In this document: piece after piece, positions 13,577-56,600 of the stretch
Layout of the letters: each line of letters begins with the position of its first letter
How positions within the stretch are numbered: the first letter of the stretch is position 1
Assembly: GCA_051294905.1 (NCBI GenBank)
Contig: CM119386.1
Span: forward strand, 5,952,001 to 6,016,000
DNA: 64,000 bases
From: Botryllus schlosseri
Taxonomy: Eukaryota
Direction: 5' to 3'
Position numbers and translations under genes: made by a program
Notes under the pieces: model-generated
What the model was told of the DNA's origin: nothing
The model's input: only the letters and a program-made list of their open reading frames with translations
Database searches by the model: none

Positions 13577-13893
13577 GGAGGCTAAAACGGAAGATCATCG
13601 AACGATTGGTCGCCCTCATGGGTTACACCAGCGTTTCGCGAACAATCCGACCATATGCAAGAGAGAGAGAGATATGATATTCTTTTTCGCCTGCACCATC
13701 GAGATGCTTTTGACGATACGGCCCCATGAGGAGGCTAAAACGGAAGATCATCGAACGATTGGTCGCTCTCACGGGTTACACCAGCGTTTCGCGAACAATC
13801 CGACCATATGCAAGAGAGAGAGAGATATGATATTCTTTTTCGCCTGCACCATCGAGATGCTTTTGACGACGGAGTTGCGATACGGCCCCATGA
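13577..13893 (+). repeat. Tandem duplication with a 153-bp unit
   Basis: Units start at 13577 and 13730, each with (AG)n; the second has a short insertion. Confidence 0.9.
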
Positions 13894-14458
13894 GGTCATC
13901 TAGTCTGCGCCCCCGTTTTTTTTCTCCTCCATGCTATCCGTGATTGCTGAGCGCCTAGCAGGATAGCTGCGGATAAAATTTTTTGAGTCTTTGGTATGAC
14001 CCGGCCGGGGATCGAACCCACGACCTACCGCTCGAGAAGCCGGACGCATAACCTCGCATAACCACTATCTCGCTCAGTGATTCTGATCGACATTTTTGTG
14101 GTGTATTGAACTGATAAAATTGCTAATAAACCAATGATGATGATGATGATCGATTGCTGGACGACTTGAAATCGACTAGTTAATTTTGCTCCGAGTCCCG
14201 AGTCGATCCACATTTCTGATAGCCGAGTCATCGTGTCATCCCAACACTGATATAGACTGCCCTGGACTAAAGTTACGTAGCTCATGCAAATCTCTGGCTT
14301 GAGGTATCGGATGACAAAATTCCATAGGCAAACACGTCACTTCACATCACTCACAGAATATCGAGAAATGAGTCATATTTATTTCGGCATTCTACGACGT
14401 CAATTGCATTTACAACTTTACTATAACAAAGTGCATCCACTACTAAATACAAAACTAA

Positions 14459-14679: not shown

Positions 14680-17600
14680 CTGTCAGCAAGCATTATCAAT
14701 CGTGACCAGGTTGTATAGAAAGTTCTCGTATGTACTGTACGTAGCTATTACCGACCACACTGAAGATGATCTCAGTTACCACCACAGTATTGATAATTGG
14801 ATGTGTTCGCGAGCATACCTACCTAAATAAAAAAGGTCATTTCTCCGCCCAGAGCTAAAGTCACCGTTTTTCGCTCCGAAATACCCGCCGGAGCATCGCT
14901 TCTGTGCTAGTTTACGGCATATCACTCGCAATTTGCTCTAAATCTGACCTAAAGATTCAAAATAGAGGACAAAATTTCAAAAAAGAGGACAAAAGGGCGT
15001 CCTATTTCATTGCGTTTTAAGATAATGATTGGTCACTACTTCCTCGAAATGTCACTTCCACCAACGTGCGTTTCTTTGCGATACATCACTGGTTCGCTAG
15101 CTGGCTCGAGTGAAACAAGTCTGAGGGAGAGGAGCGAAGTCTCGTGAGAGAAATTACGCATTTCTCGTGCTTGAGCAGGGCTGCGACCAAGTCGCAAGGT
15201 TCTGAGTCGCAAGTCAATCTCACTTTTATAGTTTTGACTCGAGTCAATTTTCAATTCATCACCGAATCAACTCCGAGTCAAGTCAGCGAGTGGTCATAGT
15301 GTTTTGACTCGAATGCGAGTCCAAGTCACTGCGTTCACTGTTCAGTTTTTAGTTGAAATCGGTCCAATCCACTTTTTTCAACTCTGGTCGAGTGATATCG
15401 TGATATAATATGGTAAATTCCCTCATCGTTAACAGTTTTAGCCCTATCTTCCATGTATCCGGAATGATAGACGAAATACCAGCAACGTGAGAACTTCAGT
15501 TTTCTTCGAAGTTACAATGAAATGTCTGTCTTGCCGTCCTAGTCTCGAGTCAATACAAAAATTGACTCGAGTCGAGTCATTTTGCGCATTTGAAAAAATG
15601 ACCCGAGTCAAGTCGAGTCAACAAAAAAATCGTGACTCAAGTCGAGTCATTACAACCCCGACCAAAACAGGCATTAAATTGTAGCTCCAGAGAATAGTAA
15701 AGTTCCACGTCATTGGTATTTCACCATTCATAGGGCCAGAAATTGTTAATGATGAAATGATGCATTCAGTATCATCCAAGCAGGGTTGAACTTGAAACTG
15801 AACGATGGTGAATTGGTGATGAATTGAAAATGACTCGCCTTGACTCGAGTCCAAGCTATAAAAATAAGTTGACTTGTGACTTGGAACCTTGTGACTTGGT
15901 TACAACAACCCTGTCTTTGACCACCTCCGAGTATAGAACAATATCGTCGATGATATTTTTAATTACAAAATGAAGTCATGCAAAATTACCACGTTAACTT
16001 GAAGTCTGCACACATATTTTCACTATTGTCATATCGTAATTGCCGGTAAAGTAAAACTCATCGTACCTTTTCGAGGACGAAGCGCGCTGGGTATGTAGGA
16101 GAGCAAGGTTTCCGTGATCTTTCGCTTCGCGAAGTCGACCAGCTCAAACTCATTGGCCACGTTTTCATTCTTCGCCTTTGCCTAGCAACGTCCAAAACAA
16201 ATTCACGACACTACCCTTAAGATCAGAACACGAAGGCTCGTACCGTTTTGATACTTTCGTCCAAAATCACCACGAACATGTTCACCAAGGCGATGCTGCA
16301 GCAGAACGTGAACGAAGTGAAGAACACCGGGCCGAGCATTCGGTCGGCGTTTTTCATTTCGGTGAAATCGAAACGGCCCAACATCATAACCAGCATCTCC
16401 TCGGCCTGACACAAAATCATTTTATTTCGACTGAATACAAATACAGAGGTCAGAGCAGCATCGTGGGTACTGGAGTACAAGTAACTCCGTAAATCCCTAC
16501 TCAATTACAAACTGGAAAGAAAGAATTAATGCAGAACAAGCAAATGATAACAAAATTGTGCACTGCTCAGATATATTTTCATGAGCTAATATGAAATTTC
16601 TAATATAATTATTTGAAATTTATATATATTACTTCGATCGAGTAATATATTCATATTGAAATGAGCCTGAATATTTTCGGCTGACACTCATCAGGGGTAA
16701 TCGTCAGCAACTAGTGGAGAATTGGAAAGAACGTTGTATATCAACAATCGAACCATAAAATATGACGTCACCGATGTGAAATTTCGAATAATCAGGGCGA
16801 AGAGAGCGCTAAAGCTCAATCTACTACTCATTTTACACGGTAAACGAACTCTTTCTGTCAGTACAGACTTGGTATGAGTATTTTGATAATAGTCGACTCC
16901 AAGACACCCGAATGAATGTGTGAACAGCCTCTAGAAGTGTATCTAAAAACAGGAACGCAGTAGCAAAAGGAGGTAACCCTACTTGAGTACTCTGAAAAGT
17001 AGAAACACATCGTCACTGACCACCTCCGATGGTCAATTAAAATGCACTTGCGACGTGTATAATGACATTTTAGATTTTGCTTGATATGACTTCGGTCCAT
17101 TTGCTGTGAGGAGATAGTTATTAGATAGTCCCTATTGGGAGATTTCAATTCCACTTTCTATTCACAAAACTTTCTCGTTTTATAACGATTGGCTACTACA
17201 AAATAGATAACGGGTCACTTACAGCCAGCAAGATCGTGCTGAAGGCGTAGATCTTCTGCTCAAACCACAGCCACGACAGGAACAAAAACGAGCAGAAGTA
17301 CAACATGAACATGGCCGCAAAGTACAGCAAAGGCACGGCCGATATCCGGAGGGTTTTCGTCAGCATTTGAATGCGAGTGTTGAACTTCAGCAGCTGAACG
17401 AATTTCACGATGGCAAAGAAGACCACGAAAGACACCATGAATCGGAACGTGTCGCTCCATAGCACGATAAACTGGAAGTTCAGGAATTTTTCTAAAAGCG
17501 AAACAGTTCCAGAATACAGATGAAAGTATGGCAAATTCATGAGACTTACCTTTGTCGGGATCTGTAGCCATTTTGTTTAATACGTACTGCGACTGTATGT

Positions 17601-26600: not shown

Positions 26601-29600
26601 CAAGTTTCAAAAAAGACATTAGCTCGCTCGAATTAAAAATATTGGTGAAATCAAATTCATAACACATTTGAATAAAATATTCATATGTATTGGCGAAGCT
26701 TTTCGGCTGACCCTCGTCAGGGGATATCGTCAGCAATATTGCGAGAATTCGAATAACTGTGTTCAACAACAATATATATCGGTAATTATGACATCACACA
26801 GAAAATATACTAAGTCAGGAAAACGAGAGAACTGAAGCGTTGGCATGTTCTCTCGTTTTCCTAACTTTGTATATTTTCTGTGTGACATCATAATTATCGA
26901 TATATATATTGTTGTTGAACATAGTTATTCGAATTCTCGCAATATTGCTGATGATATCCCCTGACGAGGGTCAGCCGAAAAGCTTCGGGAATAAATATGA
27001 ATATTTTATTCAAATGTGTTATGAAGTTCAGTACTCGTAAGCGTCTCTTTGAAATCAAATTATAAGGTCATTTCCAACGGATATTTACTTGTGAGCTACA
27101 TTCCTAATGCCCATTCGGCACCAATAGAATGAATTCACAAATCGAATTGCCAACAATTCTTTACTCGTTATTATAATTCATTATGGCTTTACCACTGCTT
27201 ACAAAATTGACGTTGGCACATACGCATTTAAAACACTGCAAATAACCAAATCACAAGATCATTTCCGACAAATCCTCACTTGAAAACCACAGGTGCCCGT
27301 CACTGAAATCCCTCGAAGTCGACGCTTGGAACAAGTTTTTGAAGCTGTGGATTTCATCCGTCCCGGCAACCATCACGACCCTGTCGATGGCCCCATCGGA
27401 TTGGTCGATGGCGAGCCAATCGTCGCACAGAAAATAAAACCTGCGACACAGATCATCAGCCCAAAAGTATCAGAAGTACAATGCAACATCACCTACTTTT
27501 CGTTAGTCTGAAGATCAGTTACCAGAATCGCGTCCAGAAACCACGACGACCATTTTCCGCCCCCCGAATTATCATGCCAAATACGCATGTAGTTCAGTTT
27601 TCCCAAAGGTTTTTCCGTGGCTAAAATCACCTTTACCACCCCACCCGCGTGGAACACCTACCAAAACCTGATTTCAATGCATTGCTTACAAAGTTATCTC
27701 AGAAGTAACTACCATGTTCTCTTTACTGGACAGCTTACGAATCGCTGTATCAAACTTCTGGCCACTGATCATGAAATGGATGTTACTTTTGGTGCCTGCA
27801 TTGGACGCTTTACCAGTTTTTACGATTAGCTGGTAGAAATATTTATCAATCAGCTTATTGTCCCATAAAGGTGCAACCGACCACTGAAAACCAAAAATTT
27901 TTATCGCATCACGTGACACATATATGGAACCAGATGTTCCTTACCTTTTCTATGTCTTTCTTATCTTCACGTCGAAGATAGATGATACCGACAACGAACA
28001 GTATAAATATGACAACCAAAGTCAAGAGCACAGCGAGGTTATTAGCGAGGTTTCCGATATTTTTCGCGATCACGTTGAAATCGATTGGATTAGGCGCCAC
28101 AAAGAAGTCGGCACCAAACGACGTCAGATGGTCGCAAAGACAAACCACAACATCCTCTGTCGTTTCGGAGCTAACAACGCATCCTAAAAATGAGTTTTCT
28201 TTAGAAGAGTGGATGGCCGACAACAGGAAAAGTGTGCGTTCTTAATTTGCATAAAGCATGCCCAATTTTATTCTGCAGCGGCCGAACCCAGCATCAGGGA
28301 CCCCAGTTTGATATTATAAAAAATGATTGCGCGCAAATATTACCATCGAATAACTGTGACACTGACAATAGCAATTTATGAGATGATGGGTGATCTACGG
28401 AATCTGCTTTTGAATTGTTAATATTTCTAATAACAAGCTCGGTTCTTGCAGTATGTTAGTAACAATGGTTGGCGCGATAACGAGGTAGACAGAGATAATA
28501 AAATTCTGGGTAATCGATGACGATGACCGTACAAACTACAAAACATACGTCCATTCTGTCTTTCCCCTGCTAATAGGATAAGCACTAAGCACACTAATGT
28601 AATGGCACAATGTTTGTTGCTGTTGTTTGGCATTAATAGTGTTCCAAGATAAATGGTTATTTTACACCAGGCCGGTTTTTATGATTGCCGAGCTGCTGAC
28701 TGGTAGCACAGCCCACTTTTGTTCTAGGCTTTTGTAAGACACCACTAGTGTGATCAGGAGCCTAGCTAAGCCCCTAAAACTGCATCGCATGTAGATTTTA
28801 GCAAATTGAATATATATCCTTTGCTGAAACAAAAGTAAATGTTTGTGTAAATGCTTTTGCACACTACTATGTCTAGAAAAAGTAGAATTTGGAGCAACGT
28901 GATATCCCGAACAAGCACAAAGTCAGGTCGAATTCCTTGCCTTCCGTGTCCCACTTCTCAGTCTTTTCATTCCAATAACGACACGACGTCACCACGGTAT
29001 GAAGCGTGTAGTTCCGCCATGTCATGTTCGCAGGATTCACGATATTTCCGCCATCATCTACATCAAAATACAAGTGGTACACGCACTTCGCCAAATTGAT
29101 GATCGGACAACGCGCACCTGTTTCGTGAATACCAAAAACGTATCTGCCGGTCCCGCCTAAAATGTCGGCGTCCAATCGGACTCGGTTTGGAAACAGCGGA
29201 TTGTCGGCGGTCCGTTTCAGATCGAGAACCAGGGAGTTGTTCTCGACGTTCGGAAAAACCGTCAAACTGTAAATCGACGACAGAAAAATCAAAGAGTCAC
29301 TCACAACCTTTCATAGACAAGAGCGAGAGAGATATTTATTGATTTGACCAACCAAAAAATATCATATTAGTGCAGGTAAATAATCAGAAGATAAACTAGG
29401 GTGTGATCGAAATGACCCTGGGTAGGGTCAACAGGTCTGATCACACCTTGCATTTGAAAATTATAAATGTTATTTAGAAATTTGGTTGTGATTGGTGGGA
29501 ATAAATATCGTAATATTGTATGCCAGGACATATGTAGCATGAGAGTTCGAATGTTTACCATGAACTTTTTGTGTAACGACATTATGATAAAGCGTGGAAT

Positions 29601-32600
29601 TCATAGCTATAGTTAACCAGTATGATGTTACGGTTCTAAAAATTTATTCTTTGCAATGCATTAATGCTATGTATGAAGTCATAATGATTGGAACTCCAAT
29701 ACTCGATGCAACTCGGCTCTTAACAGTAAATTCAGCATTGAATCAGCCAAATATTCGATATTTACCAGCCCTGGCTACAGCCACACTTCGCAATTTAATC
29801 AATTTTCAATCGACTTGTAGTTGAAGCACGCGCCAACAAAGTAATTTCCTGATCAAATGATCGCGTGTGTTTATAGATTCTAAACAGAAACTGGAAATGA
29901 GCTTCTAAAAAGTGCGAGTATCGTCCTCGAGATGTCGCACCAACTAATTAGCATTATTTCTTCAAGCGAAACAAAGCAACTTACTTGTCGGCGAGTTCAA
30001 AGTACAACCGCACGTCGGTATCAACTTCCGGCGCGATCGTCAGAAACATCACGTTCTTTTCGTCTTGCAGAACGATTTCGTGGTAGGACATGTCGTGGAC
30101 GCCAGACGGATCAAACACATGCAGCTCAGGGGGGCTGTATTTTGTTTTCTTTGTCGGTACTTCGATACGGAACGGACTGTGAATACACGGGCAGAGATGA
30201 GCGGATGTAATATCTTCAATGATTCAATTCTCCAGATTCAGATTCAAGTCCAAGAGCTTCTTGGAGGTACAAAACTTCAACAGTTGAATAGCATATATTC
30301 ATGGCTGATACTCGTCAGGGGTAATCGTCAGCAACTAGAAGAGAATTGGTGATACCTTTTTGATGAACAATGTTCTTTCCGATTCCCTACTACTTGCTGA
30401 TGATTGCCCCTGACGAGTGTCAGCCAAAAATATTCGGGTTCATTTCAATATGAATATACTATTCAATCGAAAATTGAAGAGCATTAGAAATTTCACATAA
30501 CGGTAGCTCATGAAAACGCATATCAGCAGTGTGCAATTTTGTTATCATTTGCTTCTTCTACATTAATACTTTGTTTCTACTTTGTAGAGTTACTTTTTTC
30601 ATTTAGTTTGATTGACAGCAGTATATACGACAAATCATATATATATATATGTAAATGTCTGTCCCGATTCCGTTGTGCGCGAAAGCGTAAATAGGTGACT
30701 CTCGAAGCCACGAGCTGTGACGGCAGAGTTAGTCTACGACGCACGTGTTCTCAGAGCCCGCATATGGAGGTCGGCACGCTGGGGCGGCAGACGTAAGATA
30801 GACAATTGGCTCCATTTCGCTTCATTTATTCTTTCTATTTCTTATTGAACCGCAGTATCATTGAACCTGGTAAATCTACAAGTTTCTGACCATTAATTAC
30901 TACTATTTGGCTGTTCTGTGCTAGTAAAGAAAGCTCCTTGGATCTGCGTGTGTGATCAGGATTGCAAGAGTATACTCAGAGCAGTCATTAGTCAGTGACT
31001 AGTGCGTACACCGGGAACTGTAGCTGTAGCGTCGACTCCAATCAAGCACTATACCAGCGTGTCTTGCAACAAGTCGTTGCAGCGACCGCTGCAGTCAGAA
31101 ACTTTACCAGTTACAAAGTTGAAAGTCGGAGAAGTTTGAAGTAATGGAAGCTGCAGCAACGCCAGAGAAAGCTGATGGCTCAGCCGTACAAAGTCAGACT
31201 GTGGCAACGTCAGAGACGGGTGCTGACTGCCCAGCTCCACCAAGTTCGGAAAATGTTGAAGACGTACGTGGAAGTGTCAAGAAAGAAATTGTGGACCAGA
31301 TCCCCGCGAAGAGCAAGTCAGTGGGTTCTGACGATCCAACCAGTAGTGACGGCACTTTCCATGGATTCGATCAGAGATTGGTTGAACTTGAACGTCAGTT
31401 CCATGAAACAAAAGGCGAAGTTGAAAGATATTTGGACGCAACTGAGACTGCCATGGCGCTATGCGCAAATAAAGAGGAAGTGCGTGAAGAAATGAAAAGA
31501 GTTGTTAGCCATCGAAACGAAATGAAGAAAATTACTGAAGAAATTATTTCAAATCACGCGGAAAATACGGAAACGAAAGATTTCACCGACAGTCTGAGGT
31601 TGGTTGAAATAGATTTCAAAAGAATTCGGCAAGCCGTTGCGGACTTCATGATGCTTCCATCCGAAAATGGATCCGTCCGTAGCCGAGCGAGATCTGGGGC
31701 CGGCTCGAGATCGAGTCGACATTCACAAAACAGTCGCACCAGCCTCGCCAGCAACAAAGAGCTACGTCATGCAAGCATAAGGGAAGCAGCCGCTTTGGAA
31801 GTAAAACTGGAATTTTCAGGGCAAGAAGCTGAAGTGAAAAAAAAGTTAGTTGAAGATGAAGCAGAGATGAAAAGACAAGAAGCTGAAATGAAAAAGAAGT
31901 TAGTTGAAGATGAAGCAAAGTTGTCGCAATTGGCTCTGGAGAGTCAACTTGCTGAAAAACGAGCCGTGATCAAGGCTTGTGAGCAAATTGAAAAGGAGGA
32001 AAACCCCTTCGGCCTGGACGAAGAGGCCCAGTGTGTTGGATCTAGCTTCGCAGAAATAAAGAATAGCGTTCCGGTTTTGGATTCGGGAGACAAGGTAAAA
32101 AACTTTGTTTTAAGTGACTCTCATGACCGTCCCAAAGTAACGCCATCTACTGTCAAATTTGTGGAACCTATATCGCCAACCTTAGTCGTTGATAAAGCTC
32201 CTCTGCCAATGAACCATGTCTCGTATGTTGAACCACAAACAACTGAACAAAAACTGTTTGTGCCGAGTCCTAAATCGCCCACCGATCATTCCATGCTTAT
32301 ACCAAGTGAACATCAATACAATGTAAGACCTAGGACGCGAATACCCGATATAAAAGTTTGGGTTTTTGATGGTGATGAAACCAACTATATAGAGTGGGAA
32401 AATTCGTTCAAGGCTTTGGTAGAAGATAGAGTCTGCTGTGTCAATGAGAAGATGAATTTGTTGAAACAGCATCTTGGTCCCAACCCGTTGAAAGTTGTTA
32501 AAAGTCATTTTTTGAATGGTACGGAGGAATCCTACCAAAAAGCAATCGGAGACTTGCGAGACAGGTATGGAAGCCCTGTTGTCATTGGCCAAACCTTCCT

Positions 32601-38600: not shown

Positions 38601-41600
38601 CTGTCGCACACAGAAATAACATCATTAATTTCTACTCATTTGCAAGTAGAAGTATCAATCTCCAAGACAGAATAAGAATTATAGCTACATAGTTCTGGGA
38701 TTATCACAAAGAGATTAATCCGATCAAACCTCGATTAGCGGTGGAACTAGCCTGAATCTTTGATGACTGGCGCTCCCTAATGTGTTCTACTGGGCAAAAA
38801 GTGAACACCGCAAATTTACAAAGAAACAGAAGATGAGACAATATCCATTTTGGTGCATAAAAATATAATTGTCTTTGATATGACGGCGATATCAAACAAT
38901 GTATGCAATAGTGCTTTTACGCAATCCAATGACGCCACTGCATAGAGCACCTGTGGATCTTGTCAGCGTTTGCTACAAACAGATAAAACGGATCAATTTG
39001 TCAAATATAAGTACCTCCACAGTCATATCTTTACCCACAAGCTTCACGCTAGGCTCTCCCGGTTGCTTCCGAGACATGAGGGTAGCAGACAATGAGTCAA
39101 TCGAGCCGATAGCTGAGCTACCGACTTTTCTTGCCTGAAAACAACTCGAATTGTATCAATTTACAGCGATTCCAGGCGCTTGATGGGAAAACAGCACCTG
39201 ATCTCTGTTTTGCGCGTGTAATGCAGCATTGCGCGACTCTTTATCTTTCCTGTATTCCAAACGTTCTTCGGGCGACAGGTAATTTTCCTCTTCGTCCAAG
39301 ATAGCTTTGGGTGATTCCGTCGACGGCGGAGGCAGGGAGTACTGCGGGACACCGTTATCCTATTCGCGATAAACAGATATATAAAAGACAGTGGATGGTC
39401 TACGGCCTGAGCGTTCGTAGTATTGGTCAAAATTTGTGATCAAGATACAATGTTACTATGCGAAACGTATTTTTACGTCTCAATGGTCTTGCCCAAGCAT
39501 AACGTTGATATAATTCAATTCGATCAAGTTGCAGTGAGACATATATTGCAAATCGGCACAATTTAGACACCGTCATATTCTGGCCGATTTTCATCGATTT
39601 AAATTATGATAATATAAAATATTTGAATCACATTTTTTCTCAAAGCTATTAGTTTTGCAACTCAGCTTTCATCGTAGGACTAACACAAGCAGACGCTGAC
39701 CAGGGTGTGAAAGCGACCAAGATCTTACTGTTATCTACATCGTCGGATATCAGCTCAACAAAGTATATAGCAAATGATTAAAAGCGCATAAATGTCACAC
39801 TACACCGTACCATGGCCGCTGCGCTGATAAACTGCTCCCTAGCTGCATCAACTACAAGATCAAGCGCTCCCACTAGATTAGAGGCTGCCTTTTCAATTTC
39901 CTCAGGTGCTTCGGAGCCGGCAATACTAAACACAGAAATCAGAGACAAATCAAATTTTTTTAATGACTTATGGAGGAACTTCAATATAAAATTGAATACT
40001 ATATTCATATTGAAATAAACCCTAATATTTTCAGCTGATACTCGTGAGGATTCAATCGTCAGCAATTAGTAGAGAATTGACAAGAACATTGTATATCAAC
40101 AATCGTGTCACCAATTCTCGACTAGTTGCTGACGATTACCCTAAACAAGTGTCAGCCGAATACATTCACCTATATTTCAGTATGAATATAATATTCAATC
40201 GAATCGTTGAACTACTGTATCGCATAAATGGTCTCACCCGTTAAGCGATGATGTCATATCTGATAACGCGTTCACCGCATCCAGTTGTGTATCATTACCC
40301 ACTTCGTCTGGCGCTGCTATCAGACTTTTCAGAGCACTGCTGGCTTGTTGCACTCCTAAGAAATTATATGTGATTTGACTGTGTTATTTCCTGACACCAA
40401 GCCGTACCCAGACGTGGTCAGTAAAGAAGTATTTCTACTTCTTTAGGTGTTGACCACTTGCGCTACATACTCGAGTGGTTGTTTTTAGATTACTTCCACT
40501 TGTACTCGACAGTTTTTTTATGAAAAACAACTCACTTTTCACACTTTGTATTTTGTAAAGTGGTACGTAGTTATGGGCTGGTTTGCATCACTGTTATGAG
40601 TGATACCGACAGCTCAAAATAACCACTGCATCCCGATAACTGATTATATTTTCGAAATCGCATTTATGTGTAGCGACATTTGTCATTTTGTATCAGTCAC
40701 GAATATGCACATTGCAATTTCGAAGGAAGTCACCTCCGACTAACTACTAGAAGAATGTGAACCCTCGACCAAATTTCTTGTTGAAAATACACATTTGAGG
40801 TACTTTTCAAACCATCATATTTTACCTCCATTTAAAGTAATATTGATTGAGTAGAAATTTACCGTAGTAGTTATACTACAGTACCTGCGTTACCGCTTAA
40901 ACCAAGTCTGGTCGTACCTTCCAGATTGTTTTCATAGCTGGTTTTTCCCGTCACCGCCTTCACCAGTTCCGCTCTCAATTTTGACCGGCTTTCTTTTCCG
41001 CTCGTGGCATCTCCGTCGCCTGCGCATTTAAAACAGCTAGGTTTACACTAGAGGAGTGGCTCCTTCACACGCGTACTTTTATATTGCAAAGCCTCCCCGC
41101 CATACTAGACAGCGGTTTTCCCAACAGAATGTTTCGAGCTAGGTATTGTATCTTGTATCAGCATACGCCATCTCAAAATTTAGGACAGTGACCCTATACC
41201 ATTTTTGAGAGTGAGAGCTATTTCTAAAGTAGATCAACTTTGAAGCATTCTGGCTAAAATGATAAACTAATAATCCCTTTATTTGAGAGCTACAAAATGA
41301 AACGGTTAGTATAATAATTCATAGTACCATGAAGAATTATTCTGTCCGACTTCACAAATACGTTGTATGACACGGAAGGCTTTGTTTGGAGCATATACAT
41401 GTTAAGAAAGGGGTGCTGCACTGGCACAAAACTCAACTAGAACATATTTGAAAGGTCTATACCACAAAGCAACAAAAGAAAGTCCCATACAACTTCGCCG
41501 TATCATCAATCACAGTGGTGGAATTCAAGAGTGCTGACGAACAGAAGAGAACAGCTTGACCTATGCCTTGCATAAGCGTTCATTATTGTACAATCCACCC

Positions 41601-47600: not shown

Positions 47601-50600
47601 GCGAAAACTCGTTGTTAACTGAGCATTAGCGTTATTCAAAAATAACTTTTTTTCTAGATTCTGGAGAGTCACTGATTAAATCGTTAGGTAGCCTAAAAAA
47701 TCGGTGCACGCCAAATTTGGCTAGATTCCAACTGGTTGATGTGAACGTACAGGAGACGAGTTTAAATTTATTGAAAAAAATGAAAAATATTTTTTAAATT
47801 TGACTGTCAGTCCCCTAAAACTTGGTAAGTTGTCGAAAAGAACGATGCTTGACAATTTGTGATCGCTGACAACCATTAGAAACGAAATTAATCCAGTTGA
47901 AAATTTTGGATTTGCAAAAATAGCCTGGCCGGCAGGTAATCCCAGAATTATAAATGAAAAACTCAACTAACTTCGCTTCTACGCTTGTGTCTCACTGATT
48001 CCGAAAATACAAATTAAAATTTGGTCAGAGCCATGGAACCACCCCGAAATAACCGTAAAAATCGGCATCGTTCCATCGCTCTACGCAATTTCACGGCTAT
48101 TTCAGAGCGGTTCCACTGCCTTAGCAGATTTTAATTTGTATTTTGGGAATCGGTGCGGCACTAGCTTTCGATTAATACCAGTTTTATTAAATTTGAGCGT
48201 TGGGGTCGCCAGCTATGGGACTACCATTTGTAAAAATGAAGTTTCAAGTGACTCTTGGAGGTGTAGAGCTTAAACATACAATTGAGTAGCCTAATATATT
48301 CATTATTCATATTGAAATAAACCCAGATATTTTCGACTGACACTCATCAGGAGTAAATGTCAGCAAGTAGCGGAACACTGTATCAACAACCCTTTTTACC
48401 GTACCTTTTTTCGGACTGAATATCACTTCTAACAGCGCTTTAGACACCCCAGCAGTGTAGTCGCCAGCCGAGGTATTCGCAAGAAACAAGCCGGACCACT
48501 GATAGAACAAGGTTCTGCCTAGAACGTCATTTTTCCCCGATGTTCCGGGGCTCTCTATGTCTGGATCATACGATGCGCCGAGCCCAGTTACAGTGATGAC
48601 CTTTTAGACAGTTAAGAAAATGGAATATATCACAGACAGTGTGAACAAATGAGTGCTCATGGCAGGGTTGTAACGATTCGAGTCATGACTCAAGTGCATG
48701 ACTCGGACCAAGTTATATGACTCAAGACTGGGTCTATCAGGACAGACATTTCATTGTAATTTCGAAGAATAGTTAAGTTATCCCACTATTATTATTTCGT
48801 CTATTAGTACTGCTATTTGAAAAATGGTGCCAGAAACTGTTAAAAGTGAGAAAAATTAGTATATTATGAATGCGATGCATTCGATATCACCGAGCAGAGT
48901 TGTAAAAAGTGGGTTTGACATGACTTGAACTTGATACGAACCAGTAAACACTATGCCTTGGACTCGGACTTGACTCAGTAGTGAATTTAAAATGACTCGA
49001 CTTGACTCAATAAAACAATAAAAGTCAAATTTACTTGTGACTTGGTTACAACCCTGACGGTAGTGCAGTTAGTATACACTACACACACACACACTCGGCG
49101 CACATAGGCAGCTTCCCACACAGACCATGAGTAGGTTTGGGCAAACGTGCAAACCATTTTTTTGTATTCATCAGGCGAAACTAAGAGGTTTCAAATCGAA
49201 ATTTGGGGTCACAGCCATAAAAAGGTTAGGAGCAATGATCCCTCTAAGCTGCGCACGTGCGCAAATGCGCTGTGCTGACGCGGTCTCTGCGAACAGAAAA
49301 TCCAAGTTGCGCCAAAAAATCACAAGAGATTACCTTTTTTTTTGCGCAGTGAGTTGGTGAGTGTGCGCAGACTCGTCAAAAATTAGAGTGAACATTGGTT
49401 GGGAGCCCCTGGTTTATAGGGTACGCCAGGTTATCGTGACAATTTCAATCATAATGTGATGCAAATACATCCCAACACAACACAAAATTCAAAGTGTAAA
49501 AAGTCAGCAGTTTTGACTAAAACAATTGTTAAATAGACGCGGAAGGAGTTTAAAAATAAAATCATCCTGAGTAGAAGTCACCACCTCTGAGTATATCTAA
49601 GTAGAACATATTAAAGAAACAATCAAAATGAAAATAGATGCACACCTCGTCGTGCCCGACAGTGCGCGCATTTCCATTCAGAACACCCGGCACTAACGGC
49701 GTCGGATATACTTTGAGATATATGCAATCTGTAGTGGAAACCCCGTACACTCCCACCATACCCACGTTCAAGCAAATCAAATACATTCCAAGATCCAAAA
49801 AGCGCGGTTCTACCCTCAGAATATCGCTCCTGAATGCACATCTCGCAGATAGGCACAAAATAGAAAGGAATTCGACAACACCCAACATACTTTGCAGTAT
49901 AACTCAAGCCGGGCACGTACTCGTAATGATATGTAGCGGCGTTATGTTCCAGACTGACATGTTCTCGAATGCTTTGTAAGCCTTCACCTTCCAACCATTG
50001 ATCAGCCGTATCAAAATTCATCTCAACGATATTATCTGGATCAAAATATTCATTCCATCATTGATTTGGGTCAAACTTTTGAATCTGAGTGATACAATTC
50101 GAAATTGAGTATTAAGCTATTAGTGGAGTTGAATAATCAAGTATCAAGTCATAACAGTATGAAAGGAAAGGACATAGTTTATGTTTTTGCCGCATACACA
50201 CCGACTCATGATATACATACCCACGATCTGTGCATATGCATACCATGAGTGCATGATGTGCAGATATAGCCTTGTACGGCTTTCTAAGTCTGGCACCACC
50301 CATCCATGCTATCTCAGTAATGCATGAGCAACAGGCAAGGAAATCATGGATACCAGTGTTACTAATCAAGTCTTTGGTCTGACACGGCCGGGGATCGAGC
50401 CCACGATCTACTGATCAAGAAGCAGGACGCTTCACCGTTACGCTATATTGTCGGTTGTATGAAAGATGTGAAAAGTTCAAATATGTACCTTTTATGCTAC
50501 CACAAAGAATATAACCATTTTGATCTTGTGAAATTCAATCTATTGCTCGTCTAAGTCACACTCATTTATAGCACACACAAATCAGTCCATTGTCAGAGGA

Positions 50601-53600
50601 AAAAACAATTGTTATGTAATCAAACTCCCTTGCACGACTTTCCCGTTACCTAAGGTTTAGGCCGGCTTTTGAGTTTGTATTTCCTGACACTGCAATAAAT
50701 CATCCTGTCGTAACGACAAGCATAACAACCCCAAATTGCAAATTTTCACTTACCTAAATAATAGTGAATATTACATGTATGTTAGACACTATGAAACAAT
50801 AACGTCTAACAAACCTCCATCTACTTTGCCTGAGACTTCTTTAAACAAGGCCCACGTCATCTTTGTTTCACTGGACACTAAGCAACGTGTTTTAGAGGTA
50901 CTATACAGCTTCAAAGCCAATGATTTTAGCACCTGAAAGAAGTATAAATTTCAATGCAAGATAAAAAAACTGCCATAGACTGCACACATACCTCCCTTGG
51001 ATTTGAGCGAGAGTTGGTGGGCATTTTGTCCAAGGACACCATAGGATAGTCGCAGGCTACTTCGATTACAACGATGTCTTGCAGCAAGGAATAGGAGGAA
51101 ACACGATTGAAGATAAGAATCTTTGCCTGAAGACGAGCGATATCAAGATTACTAAATGAACAGTATCAGATACTTGCAGTAACGTTGCACAAGTAATTGA
51201 TCTGCGCTTGGAGACTTGTTTTCATTTCCTCAGGATGTTCTTACAGGGTGTACAGTACACTGTACGATGTTGTACACTAGGGTTGTCCAAAATTAGGAAA
51301 ATCTCAAAAATGATGGGTATCAATGTCTCATTCTATAGATTATTGATAAAAAAACAGCAATGAGCCTGGAATAAGCTCACATAAAAGTCGTTAAGATTTG
51401 TCGCAAAGCGTTTGAAAGTAGCTACCGACGAGTGGGCGTGCCAGCGACCATAGAACGGCGACAAGACTAGTAATCACGAAAGCACTGCTCTCGATTGGCT
51501 AATCGGCTATGCTTCAATGATCACGACGGTGGTGGCTTGCTGATTAGTTGTTAAAGGAGTCTGCTAACGGCGGCGATTCTGTAAGCGCATTGTAGGTTGG
51601 TTAACGGATAATGGCATAGGATTAATTCAGGACATGTTGAGTTACGAAATACATGATGATGAACAAACAACAGTTGCTTCACATAAACTTTTACAGCATG
51701 ACTGACTTATTGTGTAGGAAACCACCGTAGCCTTCATGTCTGTTTTGACCGAGGGAAAGTACAGAACCCGCCGAGAAATATTGCATAGGCGCTTATGCAA
51801 GTGGAGAACGAATTTCTCGTTTCAGAAGGGATGCATCATCATTGAATACAAATATAAAGCTCTACAATGACACTACTTTGTCTGATCTTATTGGGCTCCG
51901 GTCGTGGTATATAATTCAAGTGTTGAATGCTCTAAGGATTGGTTGAAACAGCCGTTTATGCCGGGGACTTATTAGACTCTCACAGCAATATAAATTCACG
52001 CGTAACTGCTGTCAAAGTCGTCAATGATGCCGCAGAAATAAGTGTAAAGGTAAGCACAGACTATGCTGTTATGACCATTAAAAAGACAGCGGTTTGCTTA
52101 GCCTTAGAGAATTGAAGGCATAACAGATGTGAAACGGCGAATGATTGTGCACTTTTAGAACTAAATATAAATCCGAGAAATACCTAGTTATTATTGCAGT
52201 TACGTCAGTGCTTCTACTTTTCTGGGCGTAGGTAAAGCATATTAGTCATCGTAAACTGGTGCAGCACACCATGTGTGAGATGGATGCCGCACAAAATATG
52301 ATCTGCTCTGAAGATGTTGTATGGGCTGACAGGATAGCTTATGTATTGGAACCCCGGAGAAGTGTAACTATCGCAGCGCTTCACTGCATTTTAAGCTCGT
52401 TTTATATCCATGTCTTGTTTGATTCCAGCATTTGTAGTGTTGCAGCCGGTAATGATTCAAGATTCATTCAGGACATGTTAAGATATACCAGCAAACTGTC
52501 TTTTTGCTGGTCATACCAGCATAGTCTGTGCTTACCTTTACACCTCTTTCTGAGGCATCATTGACGACTTTGACAGTACTTACGAGTGAATTCATTTTGC
52601 TGTAAGAGTCTAATAAGTCCCCAGCACAAACGGCTGTTTCAACCAATCCTTAGAGCATTCAACACTTGAATTATATACCAAGACCAGAGCCCAATAAGAT
52701 CAGACAAAGTAGTGTCATTGTTGAGCTTTATATTTGTATTCAATGATGATGCATCCCTTCTGAAACGAGAAATTAGTTCGCCACAAGCGCCTTTGCGATA
52801 TTTCTTTTCAGGTTCTCTGCTTTCCCTCGGTCAAAACAGGCATGTAGGCTACTGCGCTTTCCATCACAATAAGCCTGTCATGCTTTAAGTTTGTGTGAAG
52901 CAGCTACTGTTTGTTCATCATCATGTATTTCTTAACTCAACATGTCCTGAATTAATCCTATACCATTATCTGTCAACCAACCTACAATGCGCTTACAGAA
53001 TCGTCGCCGTTAGCAGACTCCTTTAACAACTAAACAGCAAGCCTCCACCGTCATGATCATTGAAGCATAGCCGATTAGCCAATCGAGAGCCGTGCTTTCG
53101 TGATTACTAGTCTTGTCGCCGTTCTATGGTCGCTGGCACGCCCACTCATCGGCAGCTACTTTCAAACGCTTTGCGACAAATCTTAACGACTTTCCTGTCA
53201 GCTTATTGCAGGCCCATTGCTGTTTTTTATCAATAATCTATAGAATGAGACATTGATACCCATCCTTTTTGAGATTTTCCAAATTTTGGACAACCCTATT
53301 GTACATGTATGGTGTATGGTGCGCATACATCAGGTTCTTCGTACGTTGTAGCTAATGTTTGTATTTTCTGTCTGTGCACACTGCACAGGCATATCTGTAT
53401 TGACCACAGACTGCAAAGTCAAGAATTTTCCGGATAAATTTTAATTGTATTCTTCCAGAAATATTCTTTTGTATACGGTATTTGAAAAGAGTCAGATATT
53501 GATTTAGAAAATACTTGTAAGAGAGTAGAGGTAGACATCACTAGACGCGATAAGTAAAACACAAACTACAATATCGAGAAGGATCAGTTACGCTCAATCT

Positions 53601-56600
53601 TCACAATATTCTACTGATTCTTTATTTCATAACCCCGTTCAGTAAACTTTCGTAAATAAACTACGAGATTATAGCCTAATCAATCTATGATCACTCACCA
53701 CATAAATGCCTTCGCAAACAAAATTGTGTGGTAGGGTAACAATCAGACGAGGTGATGAATGATTTCCTCCTCCGGCAAATGTCATAGTTATCGGGTACCC
53801 ATGTTCGTCCGTCGTAGCGTTGATGTTCGGCTCGACAAAGTGAAAATCAGACTCTGCTAATCTGTAATCGCTTTCGCAAAGCTCTCGGTCAAAGCCAAAC
53901 GACACCGGCCGCGTCCCGTCGCCCCAATTCATGAGCACACACGGTTCCGAGCTTATCTGTAAAGTATTCAAGACAAATTTCCATGAGGTACGCGAGCTTA
54001 AGAAATTTACAAGTAACAGAGCGTTTTGTCTATTTGATGGCGCACATACAGCCTTCAAGCCAGGGGATTTCAACCTAATAGTGGGCCCTGATGCTGTTTT
54101 CAGTCGGACATAGAGTTTGCATGGTATACAGTGATATCAGAAATCATGTTATTATGGAAGTATAAGAGAAGTACATAGCAAATAAGATAGACCTATAGAT
54201 ACGTTTGAAACTTCAATTTTGCTTACAACACTTAACCCTTTTGAAAAGACTATTCCAGATCTAGACCAGGGGTGGCCAACCTTTTCGGCCCAAGGGCCAC
54301 ATGAGATTTACGAACCATTACGCGGGCCACTTGAATGTTGATGACCTTTTTTAGTGGTGCGATTGGAGCGAACCAGATTAGCTAACGTTGAAAACAATAC
54401 AATTTCTCATTATGTTCAGTGAGCACGTAATAGATGACAGCATCTGAAAGGATTAGATTTTTCATATTCATTCAGAAATTTTTCAGAGCGAGAAGTGAGT
54501 TGCCAAAGCATACTTAGGTACCCTGAAAACATGTAGGCACTTTGTTACCTCTGGGCAGACTTGTAAAAATCTACCGATATATTTGGTTTTTCAAGTAGTT
54601 GTAGTTCTAGTTGCGCATTAAAAAGTAGTTGAGAACAACTTGAAAACACATGTCGTCATTCTATACCAATGTTATGCTGTTTGATGTTCTTACAGCCATT
54701 ACAATCTCAGAGCCATCAGTACTACCAGTGGCCAGTGGTGGGTTTTGGGGTCGAAACCCCTCCCATCTCAAACTCGAACCCCATCCTTTTGAAATGCCGA
54801 TTGCATCTACGATATCTCTAATCACATTTGAAATTCAAGAGCTTCTTGGAACTTCAATATACAATTGAATACTATATTCATATTGAAATGAACCCGAATA
54901 TTTTCGACTGACACTCGTCAGGGGTAATCGTCAGCAACTAGTAGAGAATTGGAAAGAACATTGTATATCAACAATCGTATCACAAAATATGACGTCACCA
55001 GCCTGAAATTTCAAACGAGAGAGCGTCCATTAATTCTGCCATCGGCAAACATCTATTAGATAATCCGATTTGTGCGAATAATCATCAAGACGACAGATTT
55101 CGCCTTGTTAGGAGGGGCCGTTCACACTTCCATTTGTGTGCCTTGGAGTCGACTTTTATCAAAATACACCAACCCAAACTATGTCAACAAAAGGAGTTCA
55201 TGTACCACCTTAAAATAGTACATTGAACGCTCTCTCGTTTTAAATTTCATGCTGGTGACGTCATATTTTGTGATACGATTGTTGATATACAATGTTCTTT
55301 CCAATTCTCTACTAGTTGCTGACGATTACCCCTGACGAGTGTCAGCCGAAAATATTCGGGTTTATTGCAATATGAATATACTATTCAAATGTGACATATT
55401 AAAACATGACTTCACAATTCGCTGGGGCAAAGGCTCCTTTCGCTGCCTGGTTACACGCCTGCTTACTTCTCAAACTTCTATAAGCTCCTTCCCAACGGCA
55501 TGCACCCCTGTATAACGTGTATTCACGATATACCGCAGCACTTGGGTTTTATGTGTGTATTATCATCTTCTTCCTATGATCTGATTCTAGTAGATTGCGT
55601 GTGTAAGTTAATGCGTATTTTTCCTTGATTTACCGAGCTTCACCTATTATAAAGGCCTGGTCAACTTGGCGCAACGTGTGTCTTGTACACACAGACGCCA
55701 TGTTCACATTGATATTGTTGTTGATCCTCCCCAAGACGTGTTTATTGAACCAATTACAAATCTGTATGTATGTATTATTTTAGAACAACACATATGTATG
55801 TCACACACTACCTGTGCATTATCAAAGTAACACTGCTTATCGATATTTCTCACTGCAAGAATGAGGTATCTGATATTATCTTAGTTCGACTGATACAATA
55901 TAGGGAATATATTTTCAATAAATTGAGTTATTAAAATAGTACATTGAACGCTCTCTCGTTTGAAATTTCATGCTAGTTACGTCATATTTTGTGATACGAT
56001 TGTTGATATACAATGTTCTTTCCAATTCTCTACTAGTTGCTGACGATTACCCCTGACGAGTGTCAGACGAAAATATTCGGGTTTTTTTCAATATGAATAT
56101 ACTATTCATTTGCAATTCAATAATTCGTCTCAACGGTGCCAAGTTGAGAAGAATTGAATCTGGTTAGTCGAGTTTTAGTTAGTTAGGCGTTAGTTCTAGT
56201 TTTGAATTTTGAAAAGTGAGTAGTTCTAGTTGCGTATTTTGAAAATGAAGTAATTTGTACAAGTCTGATCACGAGCCCAGATCATTCGCCACCTAGCAAC
56301 GGCGGCTGGCATAGTTTCACAATCACCTGATGGATAGTAAGGCTGATATTCGAGGTGTAGTTTGCCAGCGGAGGTTCGGCTTCCTCAATTTTCGTTGCCC
56401 GTACCGTCTCTTGCGTATGAAACTCCATTTTTTCGGTCAGCGAGCTCACTGGATTTGAGGCTTCGACATCGATAACGTGTCTGCCAGCGCTTTCCCAGCG
56501 GACGAACAAAATGGACTGCATTGGACTTTGAACGAGCGGAGATTTGTCGAGACCCATGGTGATGCCGTTACTGAAATGGATTTTTAGTTTACAGGTGTGA

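What the first reader, a model, noticed from the sequence alone, without database searches (positions are those of the whole stretch)
54892..56082. Dispersed repeat family carrying a minimal hammerhead ribozyme, with covariation in all three stems
Seen in sequence: 11 copies of a motif NCCC-CTGA(C/T)GA-G..C-GAAA-NNNN-TC-GGGN at 16665(-), 26691(-), 26957(+), ~30300(-), 30406(+), ~40020(-), ~40135(+), ~48325(-), 54892(-), 55328(+) and 56049(+). Four copies are intact. Stem I varies ACCC/GGGT vs TCCC/GGGA, stem II GG/CC vs GT/AC, and stem III is a 6-nt palindrome that switches AATATT to AAGCTT. Established: CUGANGA...GAAA...UH is the hammerhead core, and minimal type I hammerheads with palindromic stem III occur in Penelope-like element pseudo-LTRs and retrozymes and cleave as dimers. 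Inference: this is a non-autonomous, ribozyme-bearing retroelement family; no RT or GIY-YIG partner ORF is present in the window.
Basis: partly seen in the sequence, partly recalled or inferred. Interest (0 to 1): 0.9.

Follow-up and report, generated by a model that had tools for sequence, protein, structure and literature searches.

The report
Penelope retroelement relics with pseudoknotted hammerhead

Summary
The motif is real. There are 11 copies in the window, 4 with a complete core, and about 5,500 exact pattern matches genome-wide against 1 in the reversed control.

It is not a non-autonomous family. Every window copy is a 130-365 bp, 5'-truncated 3' end of an autonomous Penelope-like element (PLE). 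[quoted passage not shown] Several uninterrupted, 98-100% identical copies and tandem arrays lie elsewhere in the genome. Window 55029-55226 encodes the last ~65 nuclease codons.

The PLE insertion signatures are present: inverted pairs with 3' ends outward, and a ~35-nt "tail" on only one arm.

The hammerhead reading holds:
- The core is conserved.
- C3-G8 switches to U3-A8.
- Stem I covaries.
- Stem III is always a palindrome.
- H17 is never G.

Across 15 lineages (4 in this genome, 11 from metagenomes, 40-64% protein identity) a 6-bp pseudoknot replaces it, pairing an upstream strand with the nucleotides before C11.1. On the 13-lineage alignment it is 100% paired, and all six pairs change on both sides.

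Rfam finds nothing. RNA-seq shows no cleavage ends. Self-cleavage is therefore inferred, not shown.

Earlier scan notes on other DNA of this genome reached the same reading.

The parts
54834..55029 (-). Inverted, 5'-truncated PLE 3' end (unit positions 2559-2692 plus 70 nt beyond the cleavage site, so it carries the long 'tail'). Left arm of an inverted pair.
   Evidence: blastn to a genomic full unit, 92% identity; inverted repeat I4; tail read
54893..54935 (-). Hammerhead of the left arm: upstream pseudoknot strand GCTGAC (54935-54930), stem I ACCC, core CTGACGA, G10.1, T, GTCAGT, C11.1, GAAA, palindrome AATATT, C17 = 54896, GGG.
   Evidence: the terminal pseudoknot pair is a G.U wobble in this copy
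55029..55392 (+). 5'-truncated PLE 3' end (unit 2364-2692 plus about 35 nt; short end). Right arm of the inverted pair.
   Evidence: blastn 92% over 364 nt
55029..55226 (+). Last ~65 codons and the stop (TGA 55224-55226) of the PLE ORF, i.e. the C-terminal end of the GIY-YIG-like nuclease domain.
   Evidence: tblastn with a full-length ORF gives 80% identity, E 7e-33, over 54996-55220; only 55029 onward also matches the unit by blastn. Compared with the translation; codons and stop read
55318..55361 (+). Complete hammerhead identical to the family's dominant form: pseudoknot 5' strand 55318-55323, linker 55324-55327, stem I 55328-55331, core 55332-55338, G10.1 55339, pseudoknot 3' strand 55341-55346, C11.1 55347, GAAA 55348-55351, palindrome 55351-55356, C17 55357, stem I 3' strand 55358-55361.
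55933..56112 (+). Third 5'-truncated PLE 3' end (unit 2547-2692 plus about 34 nt; short end). Hammerhead at 56039-56082, C17 = 56078. Its GTCAGA 3' strand leaves a mismatch at the terminal pseudoknot pair.
26653..26797 (-). Subfamily-B PLE 3' end, left arm of an inverted pair. Core present but the stem I 3' strand is mutated (GCC instead of GGG).
26908..27049 (+). Subfamily-B PLE 3' end with long tail, right arm. Complete hammerhead at 26947-26990 (GCTGAT / GTCAGC pseudoknot, TCCC/GGGA stem I, AAGCTT palindrome, C17 = 26986).
16643..16931 (-). Solitary 5'-truncated PLE 3' end (unit 2449-2718, 78% identity). Includes a decayed nuclease-coding remnant. Hammerhead has G1.1 changed (AGG).
   Evidence: tblastn 16831-16947
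30252..30479 (.). Inverted pair of short PLE 3' ends: 30252-30349 (-), long tail, GAAA box lost; 30346-30479 (+), short end, G12 changed to A.
39976..40219 (.). Inverted pair of decayed PLE 3' ends: 39976-40114 (-), tail with an internal deletion; 40088-40219 (+), short end. Both cores are degenerate.
48242..48370 (-). Solitary decayed PLE 3' end with long tail. Core box present; stem III and cleavage-site letters changed.

Best explanation
The repeats are dead, 5'-truncated 3'-terminal fragments of a recently active, autonomous Penelope-like retrotransposon with a C-terminal GIY-YIG nuclease.

The element. Its unit is 2,692 bp. One ORF of about 850 aa fills almost all of it. The ~150-nt junction between the stop codon and the next ATG holds a hammerhead motif whose cleavage site lies 14 nt before the ATG.

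How the copies arose. Insertion is target-primed reverse transcription that can start on both DNA strands and at two alternative sites 31-38 and 67-70 nt past the cleavage site. This produces head-to-head inverted pairs with 3' ends outward, variable inner truncation points, and a ~35-nt tail on one arm only.

The RNA motif. It is a type I hammerhead. Stem I has 4-6 bp. Helix II is reduced to G10.1-C11.1 and is continued by a 6-bp pseudoknot between the six nucleotides before C11.1 and a strand 7-9 nt upstream of the core. Stem III is a 6-8 nt palindrome that can form only between two copies.

Shown: the anatomy, the coding capacity, the insertion signatures, the covariation.

Inferred: in transcripts of tandem master copies, or in two RNAs held together, two motifs pair through stem III and cut after C17, trimming upstream read-through RNA. 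Every inserted copy keeps sequence beyond the cut, so the template RNA must have stayed uncut at its 3'-proximal motif. Cleavage is therefore partial or regulated. The isolated window copies are not expected to cleave.
For: Element identity:
- The motif sits between ORFs with RVT_1, a PDKGSG motif and a C-terminal ..VVYEY..GYVGRT..R..QH.. GIY-YIG-like block. Pfam GIY-YIG is sub-threshold at the right place (E 0.028). Homologous clusters carry PF01541.
- Tandem spacing is 2,692 bp.
- At least seven open frames of 857-860 aa are 98-100% identical, and a 69%-identical family forms tandem arrays.

Insertion signatures:
- All 11 window copies map to the last 130-365 nt of the unit.
- Of adjacent motif pairs within 5 kb on contig 1, 14 are (-,+) and none (+,-).
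- In 8 of 8 inverted pairs examined, one arm has the long tail and one the short end.
- RNA-seq loose ends fall at the same two termini.
- These are the features described for PLEs (PMC8557442, PMC11167929, PMC4209133).

Hammerhead:
- Across 13 aligned lineages U4 G5 A6, A9, A14, A15.1 and U16.1 are invariant, and G12 and A13 nearly so.
- C3-G8 is replaced by U3-A8 in own family D, L048 and L057, and by U3.G8 in L054. That covariation is reported for Cercyon PLEs in PMC4209133.
- H17 is C, U or A, never G.
- Stem III is a different palindrome in different lineages: AAUAUU, AAGCUU, AACGUU, AAAAUUUU, AAUAUAUU.

Pseudoknot:
- 100% of cells are paired, all 6 pairs change on both sides, and 0 of 500 shuffles reach this.
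- In 13 of 13 lineages the best upstream complement lies at -13 to -15 from the core.
- Two further lineages fit.
Against: - No Rfam hammerhead model matches, even at E up to 10. The models require hairpin stems II and III.
- RNA-seq raw reads (about 190x per strand at the motif) show no pile-up of molecule starts or ends at the predicted cut. The ORF body is almost unexpressed in that sample.
- Nested folding of a monomer prefers two inactive hairpins (-10.5 kcal/mol), and the AAUAUU duplex is very weak (-1.6).
- Published PLE minimal hammerheads cleave poorly in vitro, and in the Anolis Poseidon element the motif was not needed for insertion in vitro (PMC4209133, PMC11167929).
- The pseudoknot strands in the metagenomic loci were first spotted by eye. 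One search was run to remove that bias.
- The GIY-YIG assignment rests on a sub-threshold Pfam hit plus the motif.
Confidence: 0.85

Rival explanations
1. One reading: a non-autonomous, retrozyme-like family of short ribozyme-bearing repeats mobilised in trans, with a minimal hammerhead whose stem II is a 2-bp hairpin.
For: Window copies are short and non-coding apart from one nuclease remnant. Two direct copies lie 721 bp apart. Animal retrozymes are proposed to derive from PLE terminal repeats (bioRxiv 10.64898/2026.07.22.740005).
Against: Copies are collinear with the 3' end of a 2,692-bp coding unit and differ only in the 5' truncation point. Full-length copies with uninterrupted ORFs exist. 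The 540 bp between the two direct copies is an unrelated repeat also found at 45721-46109 without PLE flanks. There are no short tandem arrays in the window. The hairpin stem II pairs in 2 of 13 lineages.
Confidence: 0.05
2. A miniature inverted-repeat DNA transposon (MITE): ~170-bp terminal inverted repeats flanking a short core, with the hammerhead-like motif a coincidental part of the repeat.
For: Four window copies are inverted pairs with 95% complementary arms. A 2.9-kb inverted pair exists elsewhere.
Against: Arm lengths differ from pair to pair and meet at arbitrary inner points. The arms contain RT/nuclease coding sequence. The two outer ends are unequal, one with a tail and one without. 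Single copies and direct tandems are common. No transposase was found.
Confidence: 0.02
3. The motif folds as shown but is not a working ribozyme in this lineage. Under this view it is conserved as a structured RNA signal for the element's own protein (RT/nuclease recognition, dimerisation of two template RNAs, or translation start), and the hammerhead core is retained for binding rather than cutting.
For: No cleavage ends in RNA-seq. Every genomic copy retains 31-70 nt beyond the cut, so templates were uncut. In related lineages the ATG lies 2-52 nt after the cut and can sit inside stem I. Published PLE motifs have low activity and are dispensable in vitro (PMC4209133, PMC11167929).
Against: The conserved positions are exactly the catalytic ones. 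C3-G8 covaries to U3-A8, a tertiary pair of the active fold. H17 avoids G. None of this is easily explained by protein binding alone. Hammerheads with a 1-bp stem II plus a 6-bp pseudoknot are fast in vitro (PMC3088659).
Confidence: 0.25
4. The conserved pairing is the local hairpin CUGAC/GUCAG (core against 'loop II'), an off-switch or unrelated hairpin, and the upstream complement is a by-product of a duplicated CTGACGA box.
For: The hairpin is perfect in families A and B and wobble-paired in family C. It is part of the monomer minimum-energy fold.
Against: Across 13 lineages it is paired in 74% of cells, the same as shuffles (72.5%; 197 of 500 shuffles reach it), and two of its five pairs are mostly unpaired. 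The upstream pairing is 100% paired with entirely different sequences.
Confidence: 0.05

Closest known systems
Minimal hammerheads of Penelope-like elements (Cervera & de la Pena 2014, PMC4209133; Lunse, Weinberg & Breaker 2017, cited in PMC6765202 but not readable here)
   Same: Type I motif in the terminal repeat or junction of a PLE. Short stem I. G10.1-C11.1 conserved. Palindromic stem III implying dimers. The U3-A8 core variant. Thousands of mostly solitary copies from truncated elements. Pairs 100-700 bp apart on opposite strands.
   Different: The described consensus has a long hairpin helix II (6-8 bp) with a bulged base at its 5' end. Here the hairpin is absent, and a 6-bp pseudoknot with an upstream strand takes its place.
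[quoted passage not shown] 2011, PMC3088659); PK hammerhead crystal structure PDB 8YDC (Zhan et al. 2024, PMC11300833)
   Same: Helix II is functionally replaced by, or supported by, a 6-bp pseudoknot helix. The strand order is the same: upstream strand, stem I, core, pseudoknot 3' strand, GAAA, stem III, site, stem I.
   Different: In 8YDC the upstream strand is the loop of an extra hairpin (helix IV) joined to stem I by an A-minor triplex. Here helix IV is weak or impossible (linker 1-4 nt). Stem III here is an intermolecular palindrome. The context is a eukaryotic retrotransposon.
Poseidon PLE of Anolis carolinensis, PAc (PMC11167929), and general PLE insertion structure (Craig et al. 2021, PMC8557442)
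   Same: The hammerhead overlaps the ORF start region. There are two alternative 3' termini about 35 nt apart (the 'tail') inside the beginning of the ORF. Tandem units form pseudo-LTRs. An inverted 5'-truncated copy lies alongside. The tail is on one end only.
   Different: The layout is more compact here: cut 14 nt before the ATG and termini 17-56 nt into the ORF, against a cut 26 nt after the ATG and RT starts at 111-118 nt in PAc. The hammerhead architecture differs.
Retrozymes (plant LTR type and animal non-LTR type)
   Same: Hammerhead-bearing retroelement-derived repeats. Animal ones are thought to derive from PLE terminal repeats.
   Different: Retrozymes are non-coding units, in animals in short tandem arrays, that give circular RNAs. 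Here the units are coding and 2.7 kb long, and the short copies are simple truncations.

Membership tests
Penelope-like element (canonical, nuclease-positive) | Reverse transcriptase domain with the PLE-type DKG motif | tested here: met
   RVT_1 hits E 1e-7 to 8e-9 in four ORFs next to the motif. PDKGSG read in the translation. 507 homologues with RVT_1 plus two further Pfam families (PF28514 DUF8422, PF26215 HTH_animal) recur across them. Clade placement by phylogeny was not done.
Penelope-like element (canonical, nuclease-positive) | C-terminal GIY-YIG endonuclease | tested here: inconclusive
   The Pfam GIY-YIG hit is at the expected place but below cut-off (15.2 bits against 22.6, E 0.028). 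The motif ..VVYEY..CHCDCGYVGRT..R..QH.. is visible. Two homologous clusters carry PF01541.
Penelope-like element (canonical, nuclease-positive) | Partial tandems forming pseudo-LTRs | tested here: met
   Direct repeats spaced 2,692 bp. Tandem ORFs on contigs 16, 12 and 6. Each full-length ORF is preceded by the junction motif.
Penelope-like element (canonical, nuclease-positive) | Adjacent inverted 5'-truncated copy, and a 30-40 bp tail on one end only | tested here: met
   14 (-,+) against 0 (+,-) neighbouring pairs. In 8 of 8 pairs one arm has the long end and one the short. The tail is about 35 nt.
Hammerhead ribozyme | Conserved core: C/U3 U4 G5 A6 N7 G/A8 A9 ... G12 A13 A14, A15.1-U16.1, H17 not G | tested here: met
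   Columns invariant or nearly invariant across 13 lineages. C3-G8 to U3-A8 covariation. H17 is C, U or A.
Hammerhead ribozyme | Stem I supported by covariation | tested here: met
   90% of cells are paired despite alignment slips, and all 4 pairs change on both sides.
Hammerhead ribozyme | Stem II as a hairpin next to the core | tested here: not met
   Only G10.1-C11.1 is kept (12 G-C, plus one lineage, L049, where it is U-A by my parse but mis-scored as U.G by an alignment slip). The next pairs form in 2 of 13 lineages. A 6-bp pseudoknot takes its place, an arrangement known from PMC3088659 and PMC11300833.
Hammerhead ribozyme | Stem III | tested here: met
   There is no hairpin. A 6-8 nt palindrome is present in every lineage, with five different sequences, which fits the dimeric mode of PLE hammerheads.
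Hammerhead ribozyme | Match to curated covariance models (Rfam hammerhead families) | tested here: not met
   No hit at the gathering threshold or at E up to 10 in the window region or in 10 related loci.
Hammerhead ribozyme | Site-specific self-cleavage | tested here: inconclusive
   RNA-seq raw reads show no excess of molecule ends at the predicted site. However, nearly all reads come from solitary truncated copies inside other transcripts.
Retrozyme (non-autonomous) | Non-coding unit in short tandem repeats bounded by hammerheads, giving circular RNA | tested here: not met
   Units are 2.7 kb and coding. The short copies are truncations. The 721-bp spaced pair encloses an unrelated repeat.
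MITE / terminal-inverted-repeat DNA transposon | Fixed terminal inverted repeats, target-site duplication, no reverse transcriptase | tested here: not met
   Arms are variable, outer ends unequal, and RT coding lies inside the arms.

The most novel reading that the evidence does not exclude
A whole clade of canonical Penelope-like elements (this genome plus marine metagenome relatives down to 40% protein identity) uses a hammerhead architecture that I could not find described for PLEs. Helix II is reduced to one pair and replaced by a 6-bp pseudoknot with a strand at a fixed 7-9 nt upstream of the core, without the helix IV of the crystallised PK hammerhead. This is combined with an obligatorily intermolecular palindromic stem III. 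If so, descriptor-based and Rfam-based surveys systematically miss it, and some PLEs reported as lacking canonical hammerheads or having only an 'HHR core' may carry this form.
Probability: 0.35. Interest if true: 0.55.

Novelty: new variant of a known kind. Interest (0 to 1): 0.4.

Why it matters
For genome annotation, the result is ordinary. Thousands of small 'ribozyme repeats' here are just truncated tails of one young PLE family and should be masked as such, not treated as a new non-autonomous element.

For ribozyme biology, there is a modest gain. The data give clean, cross-species covariation for a pseudoknotted type I hammerhead that needs a partner copy for stem III, in a natural eukaryotic retroelement. 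This links the PLE minimal hammerheads to the pseudoknot hammerheads known from bacteria and from the 8YDC structure. It also explains why standard models miss them.

The anatomy also restates a puzzle. Every inserted copy keeps sequence beyond the cut site, so the template RNA is uncut at that motif. The motif's real job (5' trimming, RNA pairing, translation) is therefore still open and testable.

Tried and rejected
- Rfam at gathering and permissive thresholds: no hammerhead hit. This is uninformative for this architecture.
- MITE reading of the inverted pairs: rejected after finding RT ORFs inside long pairs and unequal ends.
- A helix IV like that of PDB 8YDC, flanking the upstream strand: possible as 4 weak pairs in families A and B, but impossible in lineages with 1-2 nt linkers. 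Not conserved.
- In vivo cleavage by laying RNA-seq reads: no ends at the site, and no verdict, because full-length copies were almost silent in that run and only about 6% of the run was read.
- Unit-length metagenomic contigs (2,698 and 2,691 nt): examined in case they were cleaved or circular RNAs. One has a 55-nt end overlap, indicating a tandem or circular assembly of DNA. The ends of neither contig coincide with the cut site.
- L053 has only a doubtful 4-bp version of the pseudoknot and was left out of the alignment.
- L050 has an extra C inside the GAAA box and is probably a dead copy.
- Papers PMC5785218 (Lunse 2017) and PMC4509812 (Weinberg 2015) could not be read. Whether the PLE pseudoknot form is already drawn there remains unknown.
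Full report
**Observation**

- The strict pattern CTGAYGAG..CGAAA..TCGGG has four matches in the window and none in 100 shuffles.
- A 32-mer search with up to 3 mismatches adds 16666(-) and 30407(+).
- BLAST with a genomic full-length unit recovers all eleven listed copies.
- In the whole 495-Mb assembly the pattern occurs 5,516 times, against once for the reversed control.
- Four window copies have a complete motif (26947-26990, 54893-54935 on the minus strand, 55318-55361, 56039-56082).
- The other seven carry changes in G12, the GAAA box, stem I or the cleavage-site letters.

**What the repeat is**

The copies often sit as inverted pairs with the motif near the outer ends, which at first suggested a MITE. 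Long pairs elsewhere in the genome, however, contain ORFs with reverse transcriptase.

One region (contig 1, about 13.42 Mb) shows direct repeats spaced 2,692 bp and an uninterrupted 859-codon frame. Its translation has the following features:
- an RT core;
- the PLE-typical PDKGSG motif;
- a C-terminal block ..VVYEY..CHCDCGYVGRT..R..QH.. that Pfam places on GIY-YIG, although below cut-off;
- an ATG 14 nt after the predicted cleavage site, so the motif lies in the ~150-nt junction between one ORF's stop and the next ORF's start.

A genome search with this protein gave 18,829 first-look candidates. Among the 53 scored were at least seven stop-free frames of 857-860 aa at 98-100% identity. There were also sister families at 89% and about 69% identity, the latter in tandem arrays of 2,700-bp units.

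The family is therefore autonomous and young. All eleven window copies align to the last 130-365 nt of the unit, differing only in where they are truncated at the 5' side. Window 55029-55226 still encodes the last ~65 residues and the stop of the nuclease.

**Insertion signatures**

Downstream of the cut site the copies end at one of two places: about 31-38 nt or about 67-70 nt. RNA-seq reads that run off into flanking DNA break at the same two places.

In each of eight inverted pairs examined (four in the window, four on contig 1), one arm has the long end and the other the short end. Among the first 100 genomic matches, neighbouring motifs within 5 kb are (-,+) fourteen times and (+,-) never. 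The 3' ends therefore always point outward.

These are the published PLE hallmarks:
- partial tandems (pseudo-LTRs), an adjacent inverted 5'-truncated copy, and a 30-40 bp tail on one end (PMC8557442);
- opposite-strand motif pairs 100-700 bp apart, and mostly solitary truncated copies (PMC4209133);
- in the Anolis Poseidon element, cleavage and extension of both DNA strands, and two internal RT start sites that define the tail (PMC11167929).

**The RNA motif**

The four families in this genome differ in instructive ways.

| Family | Stem I | Stem III | Core |
|---|---|---|---|
| A | ACCC/GGGU | AAUAUU | CUGACGA |
| B | UCCC/GGGA | AAGCUU | CUGACGA |
| C | ACCC/GGGU | AAGCUU | CUGAUGA |
| D | GCCC/GGGU | AAGCUU | UUGA(A/G)AA |

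The family D core carries the U3-A8 substitute for the C3-G8 tertiary pair, a covariation already reported for Cercyon PLEs (PMC4209133).

Instead, the six nucleotides before C11.1 (GUCAGC) are complementary to GCUGAC, which starts 14 nt upstream of the core. Family C has a compensatory change (GCCGAC/GUUGGC).

To test this outside the genome I took homologous ORFs (40-64% identity) from metagenome and Logan contigs and read their junctions. Eleven of twelve show the same plan with unrelated sequences: UCUAGC/GCUAGA, UCAAGG/CCUUGA, CUGGA/UCCAG, UCCUAU/AUAGGA, UCUGAC/GUCAGA (two lineages, L051 and L057), UCCAGU/GCUGGA, CUCAGU/ACUGAG, CCCAGU/GCUGGG, UCCCAU/AUGGGA, GACGCG/CGCGUC. Linker plus stem I is always 7-9 nt.

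Counts on a 13-lineage alignment:

| Structure tested | Cells paired | Against shuffles or other note |
|---|---|---|
| Pseudoknot (6 bp) | 100% | all six pairs change on both sides; 0 of 500 shuffles reach any measure of the whole structure; slid controls collapse to 25-42% |
| Stem I | 90% | all 4 pairs change on both sides |
| Local hairpin CUGAC/GUCAG | 74% | shuffled mean 72.5%; 197 of 500 shuffles reach it |

An unbiased scan of the 60 nt upstream puts the best complement at -13 to -15 from the core in all 13 lineages.

Other observations from the same set:
- Stem III is a palindrome everywhere, in five different versions.
- H17 is C, U or A.
- The pseudoknot duplex is about -8 kcal/mol.
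- The AAUAUU self-duplex is only -1.6 kcal/mol.
- A nested monomer fold prefers two inactive hairpins. This is consistent with a motif that is off as a monomer.

**Relation to what is known**

PLE hammerheads with a palindromic stem III that act as dimers are established (PMC4209133; PMC6765202, citing Lunse et al. 2017).

Hammerheads in which a 6-bp pseudoknot supports or replaces helix II are also established. [quoted passage not shown] The other is the PK hammerhead crystal structure 8YDC, whose 6-bp PK helix 'fulfils the same role' as helix II (PMC11300833).

Two things differ here:
- The two features are combined in a retrotransposon.
- The helix IV hairpin of 8YDC is absent. The linker is only 1-4 nt in several lineages.

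In the held literature I found no description of this form in PLEs. However, two key papers were not readable. I therefore rate it a new variant of a known kind, not more.

**Function**

Self-cleavage is inferred from conservation, not shown.
- Rfam models do not recognise the motif.
- Raw RNA-seq reads laid on a tandem junction plus one ORF show deep, two-stranded coverage only over the terminal ~300 nt.
- 96% of those reads continue into unrelated flanks, so they come from solitary relics inside other transcripts.
- There is almost no coverage of the ORF body.
- There is no excess of molecule ends at the predicted cut.

Every inserted copy retains 31-70 nt beyond the cut, so the RNA copied by the RT was uncut at its 3'-proximal motif. 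This agrees with the Anolis result that unprocessed RNA is the insertion substrate (PMC11167929).

My best reading is that cleavage is partial and serves 5' trimming of read-through or multimeric transcripts of master copies. A structural role (RNA pairing or protein recognition) is a serious rival at about one in four.

**Earlier notes of this scan**

Notes on other DNA of the same genome reached the same reading, a PLE relic with a pseudoknotted hammerhead. I had recorded the pseudoknot idea before looking (note), and I tested it here with cross-species data.

Noticed in passing
L047:543-588, L047:3342-3386, L052:1160-1206, L052:369-415(-); similar hairpin in L058 about 100-125: In three related PLE lineages from metagenome or Logan contigs, a histone-3'-UTR-like stem-loop follows the hammerhead cut site by about 10 nt, just before the ORF's ATG. 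The Rfam Histone3 score is 36.7 bits in L047, above the gathering score of 34. This may point to histone-type 3' end processing or SLBP binding of the element's RNA. It is absent from this genome's family A.
   Followed up: partly
window 55387-55775 and 45721-46109: A 389-nt repeat (91% identity, inverted) lies between the second and third PLE fragments of the flagged region. A second copy has no PLE flanks. It is an unrelated dispersed repeat, not part of the PLE.
   Followed up: partly
window 51271-53305: Large nested inverted repeats (arms of 83, 342, 107 and 289 nt; 82-96% complementary) form a ~2-kb foldback-like structure. Nature unknown.
   Followed up: no
window 30650-30949 and 37534-37833: A direct repeat of at least 300 nt at 100% identity, 6.9 kb apart (possibly LTRs or a recent duplication). 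Its extent was not determined.
   Followed up: no
window 13986-14053 and 50369-50436: A 68-nt repeat with a tRNA-like T-arm signature on the reverse strand (GGTTCGATCCC). ARAGORN calls no tRNA in the window. It is probably a tRNA-derived SINE.
   Followed up: partly
window 13577-13869: Two tandem copies of a 153-nt unit (99% identity).
   Followed up: no
L051:509-514; L057 about 85-95; L046:442-459: The distance from the hammerhead cut to the ORF's ATG ranges from 2 nt (ATG inside the stem I 3' strand, L051) and 4 nt (L057) to 14 nt (this genome) and 52 nt (L047). A cleaved RNA would therefore have an almost leaderless 5' end in some lineages.
   Followed up: partly
L057 (2,698 nt, 55-nt end overlap): Several homologues sit on contigs of almost exactly one unit length (2,654-2,698 nt). 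One has identical ends, as expected for tandem arrays or circles collapsed by the assembler.
   Followed up: partly
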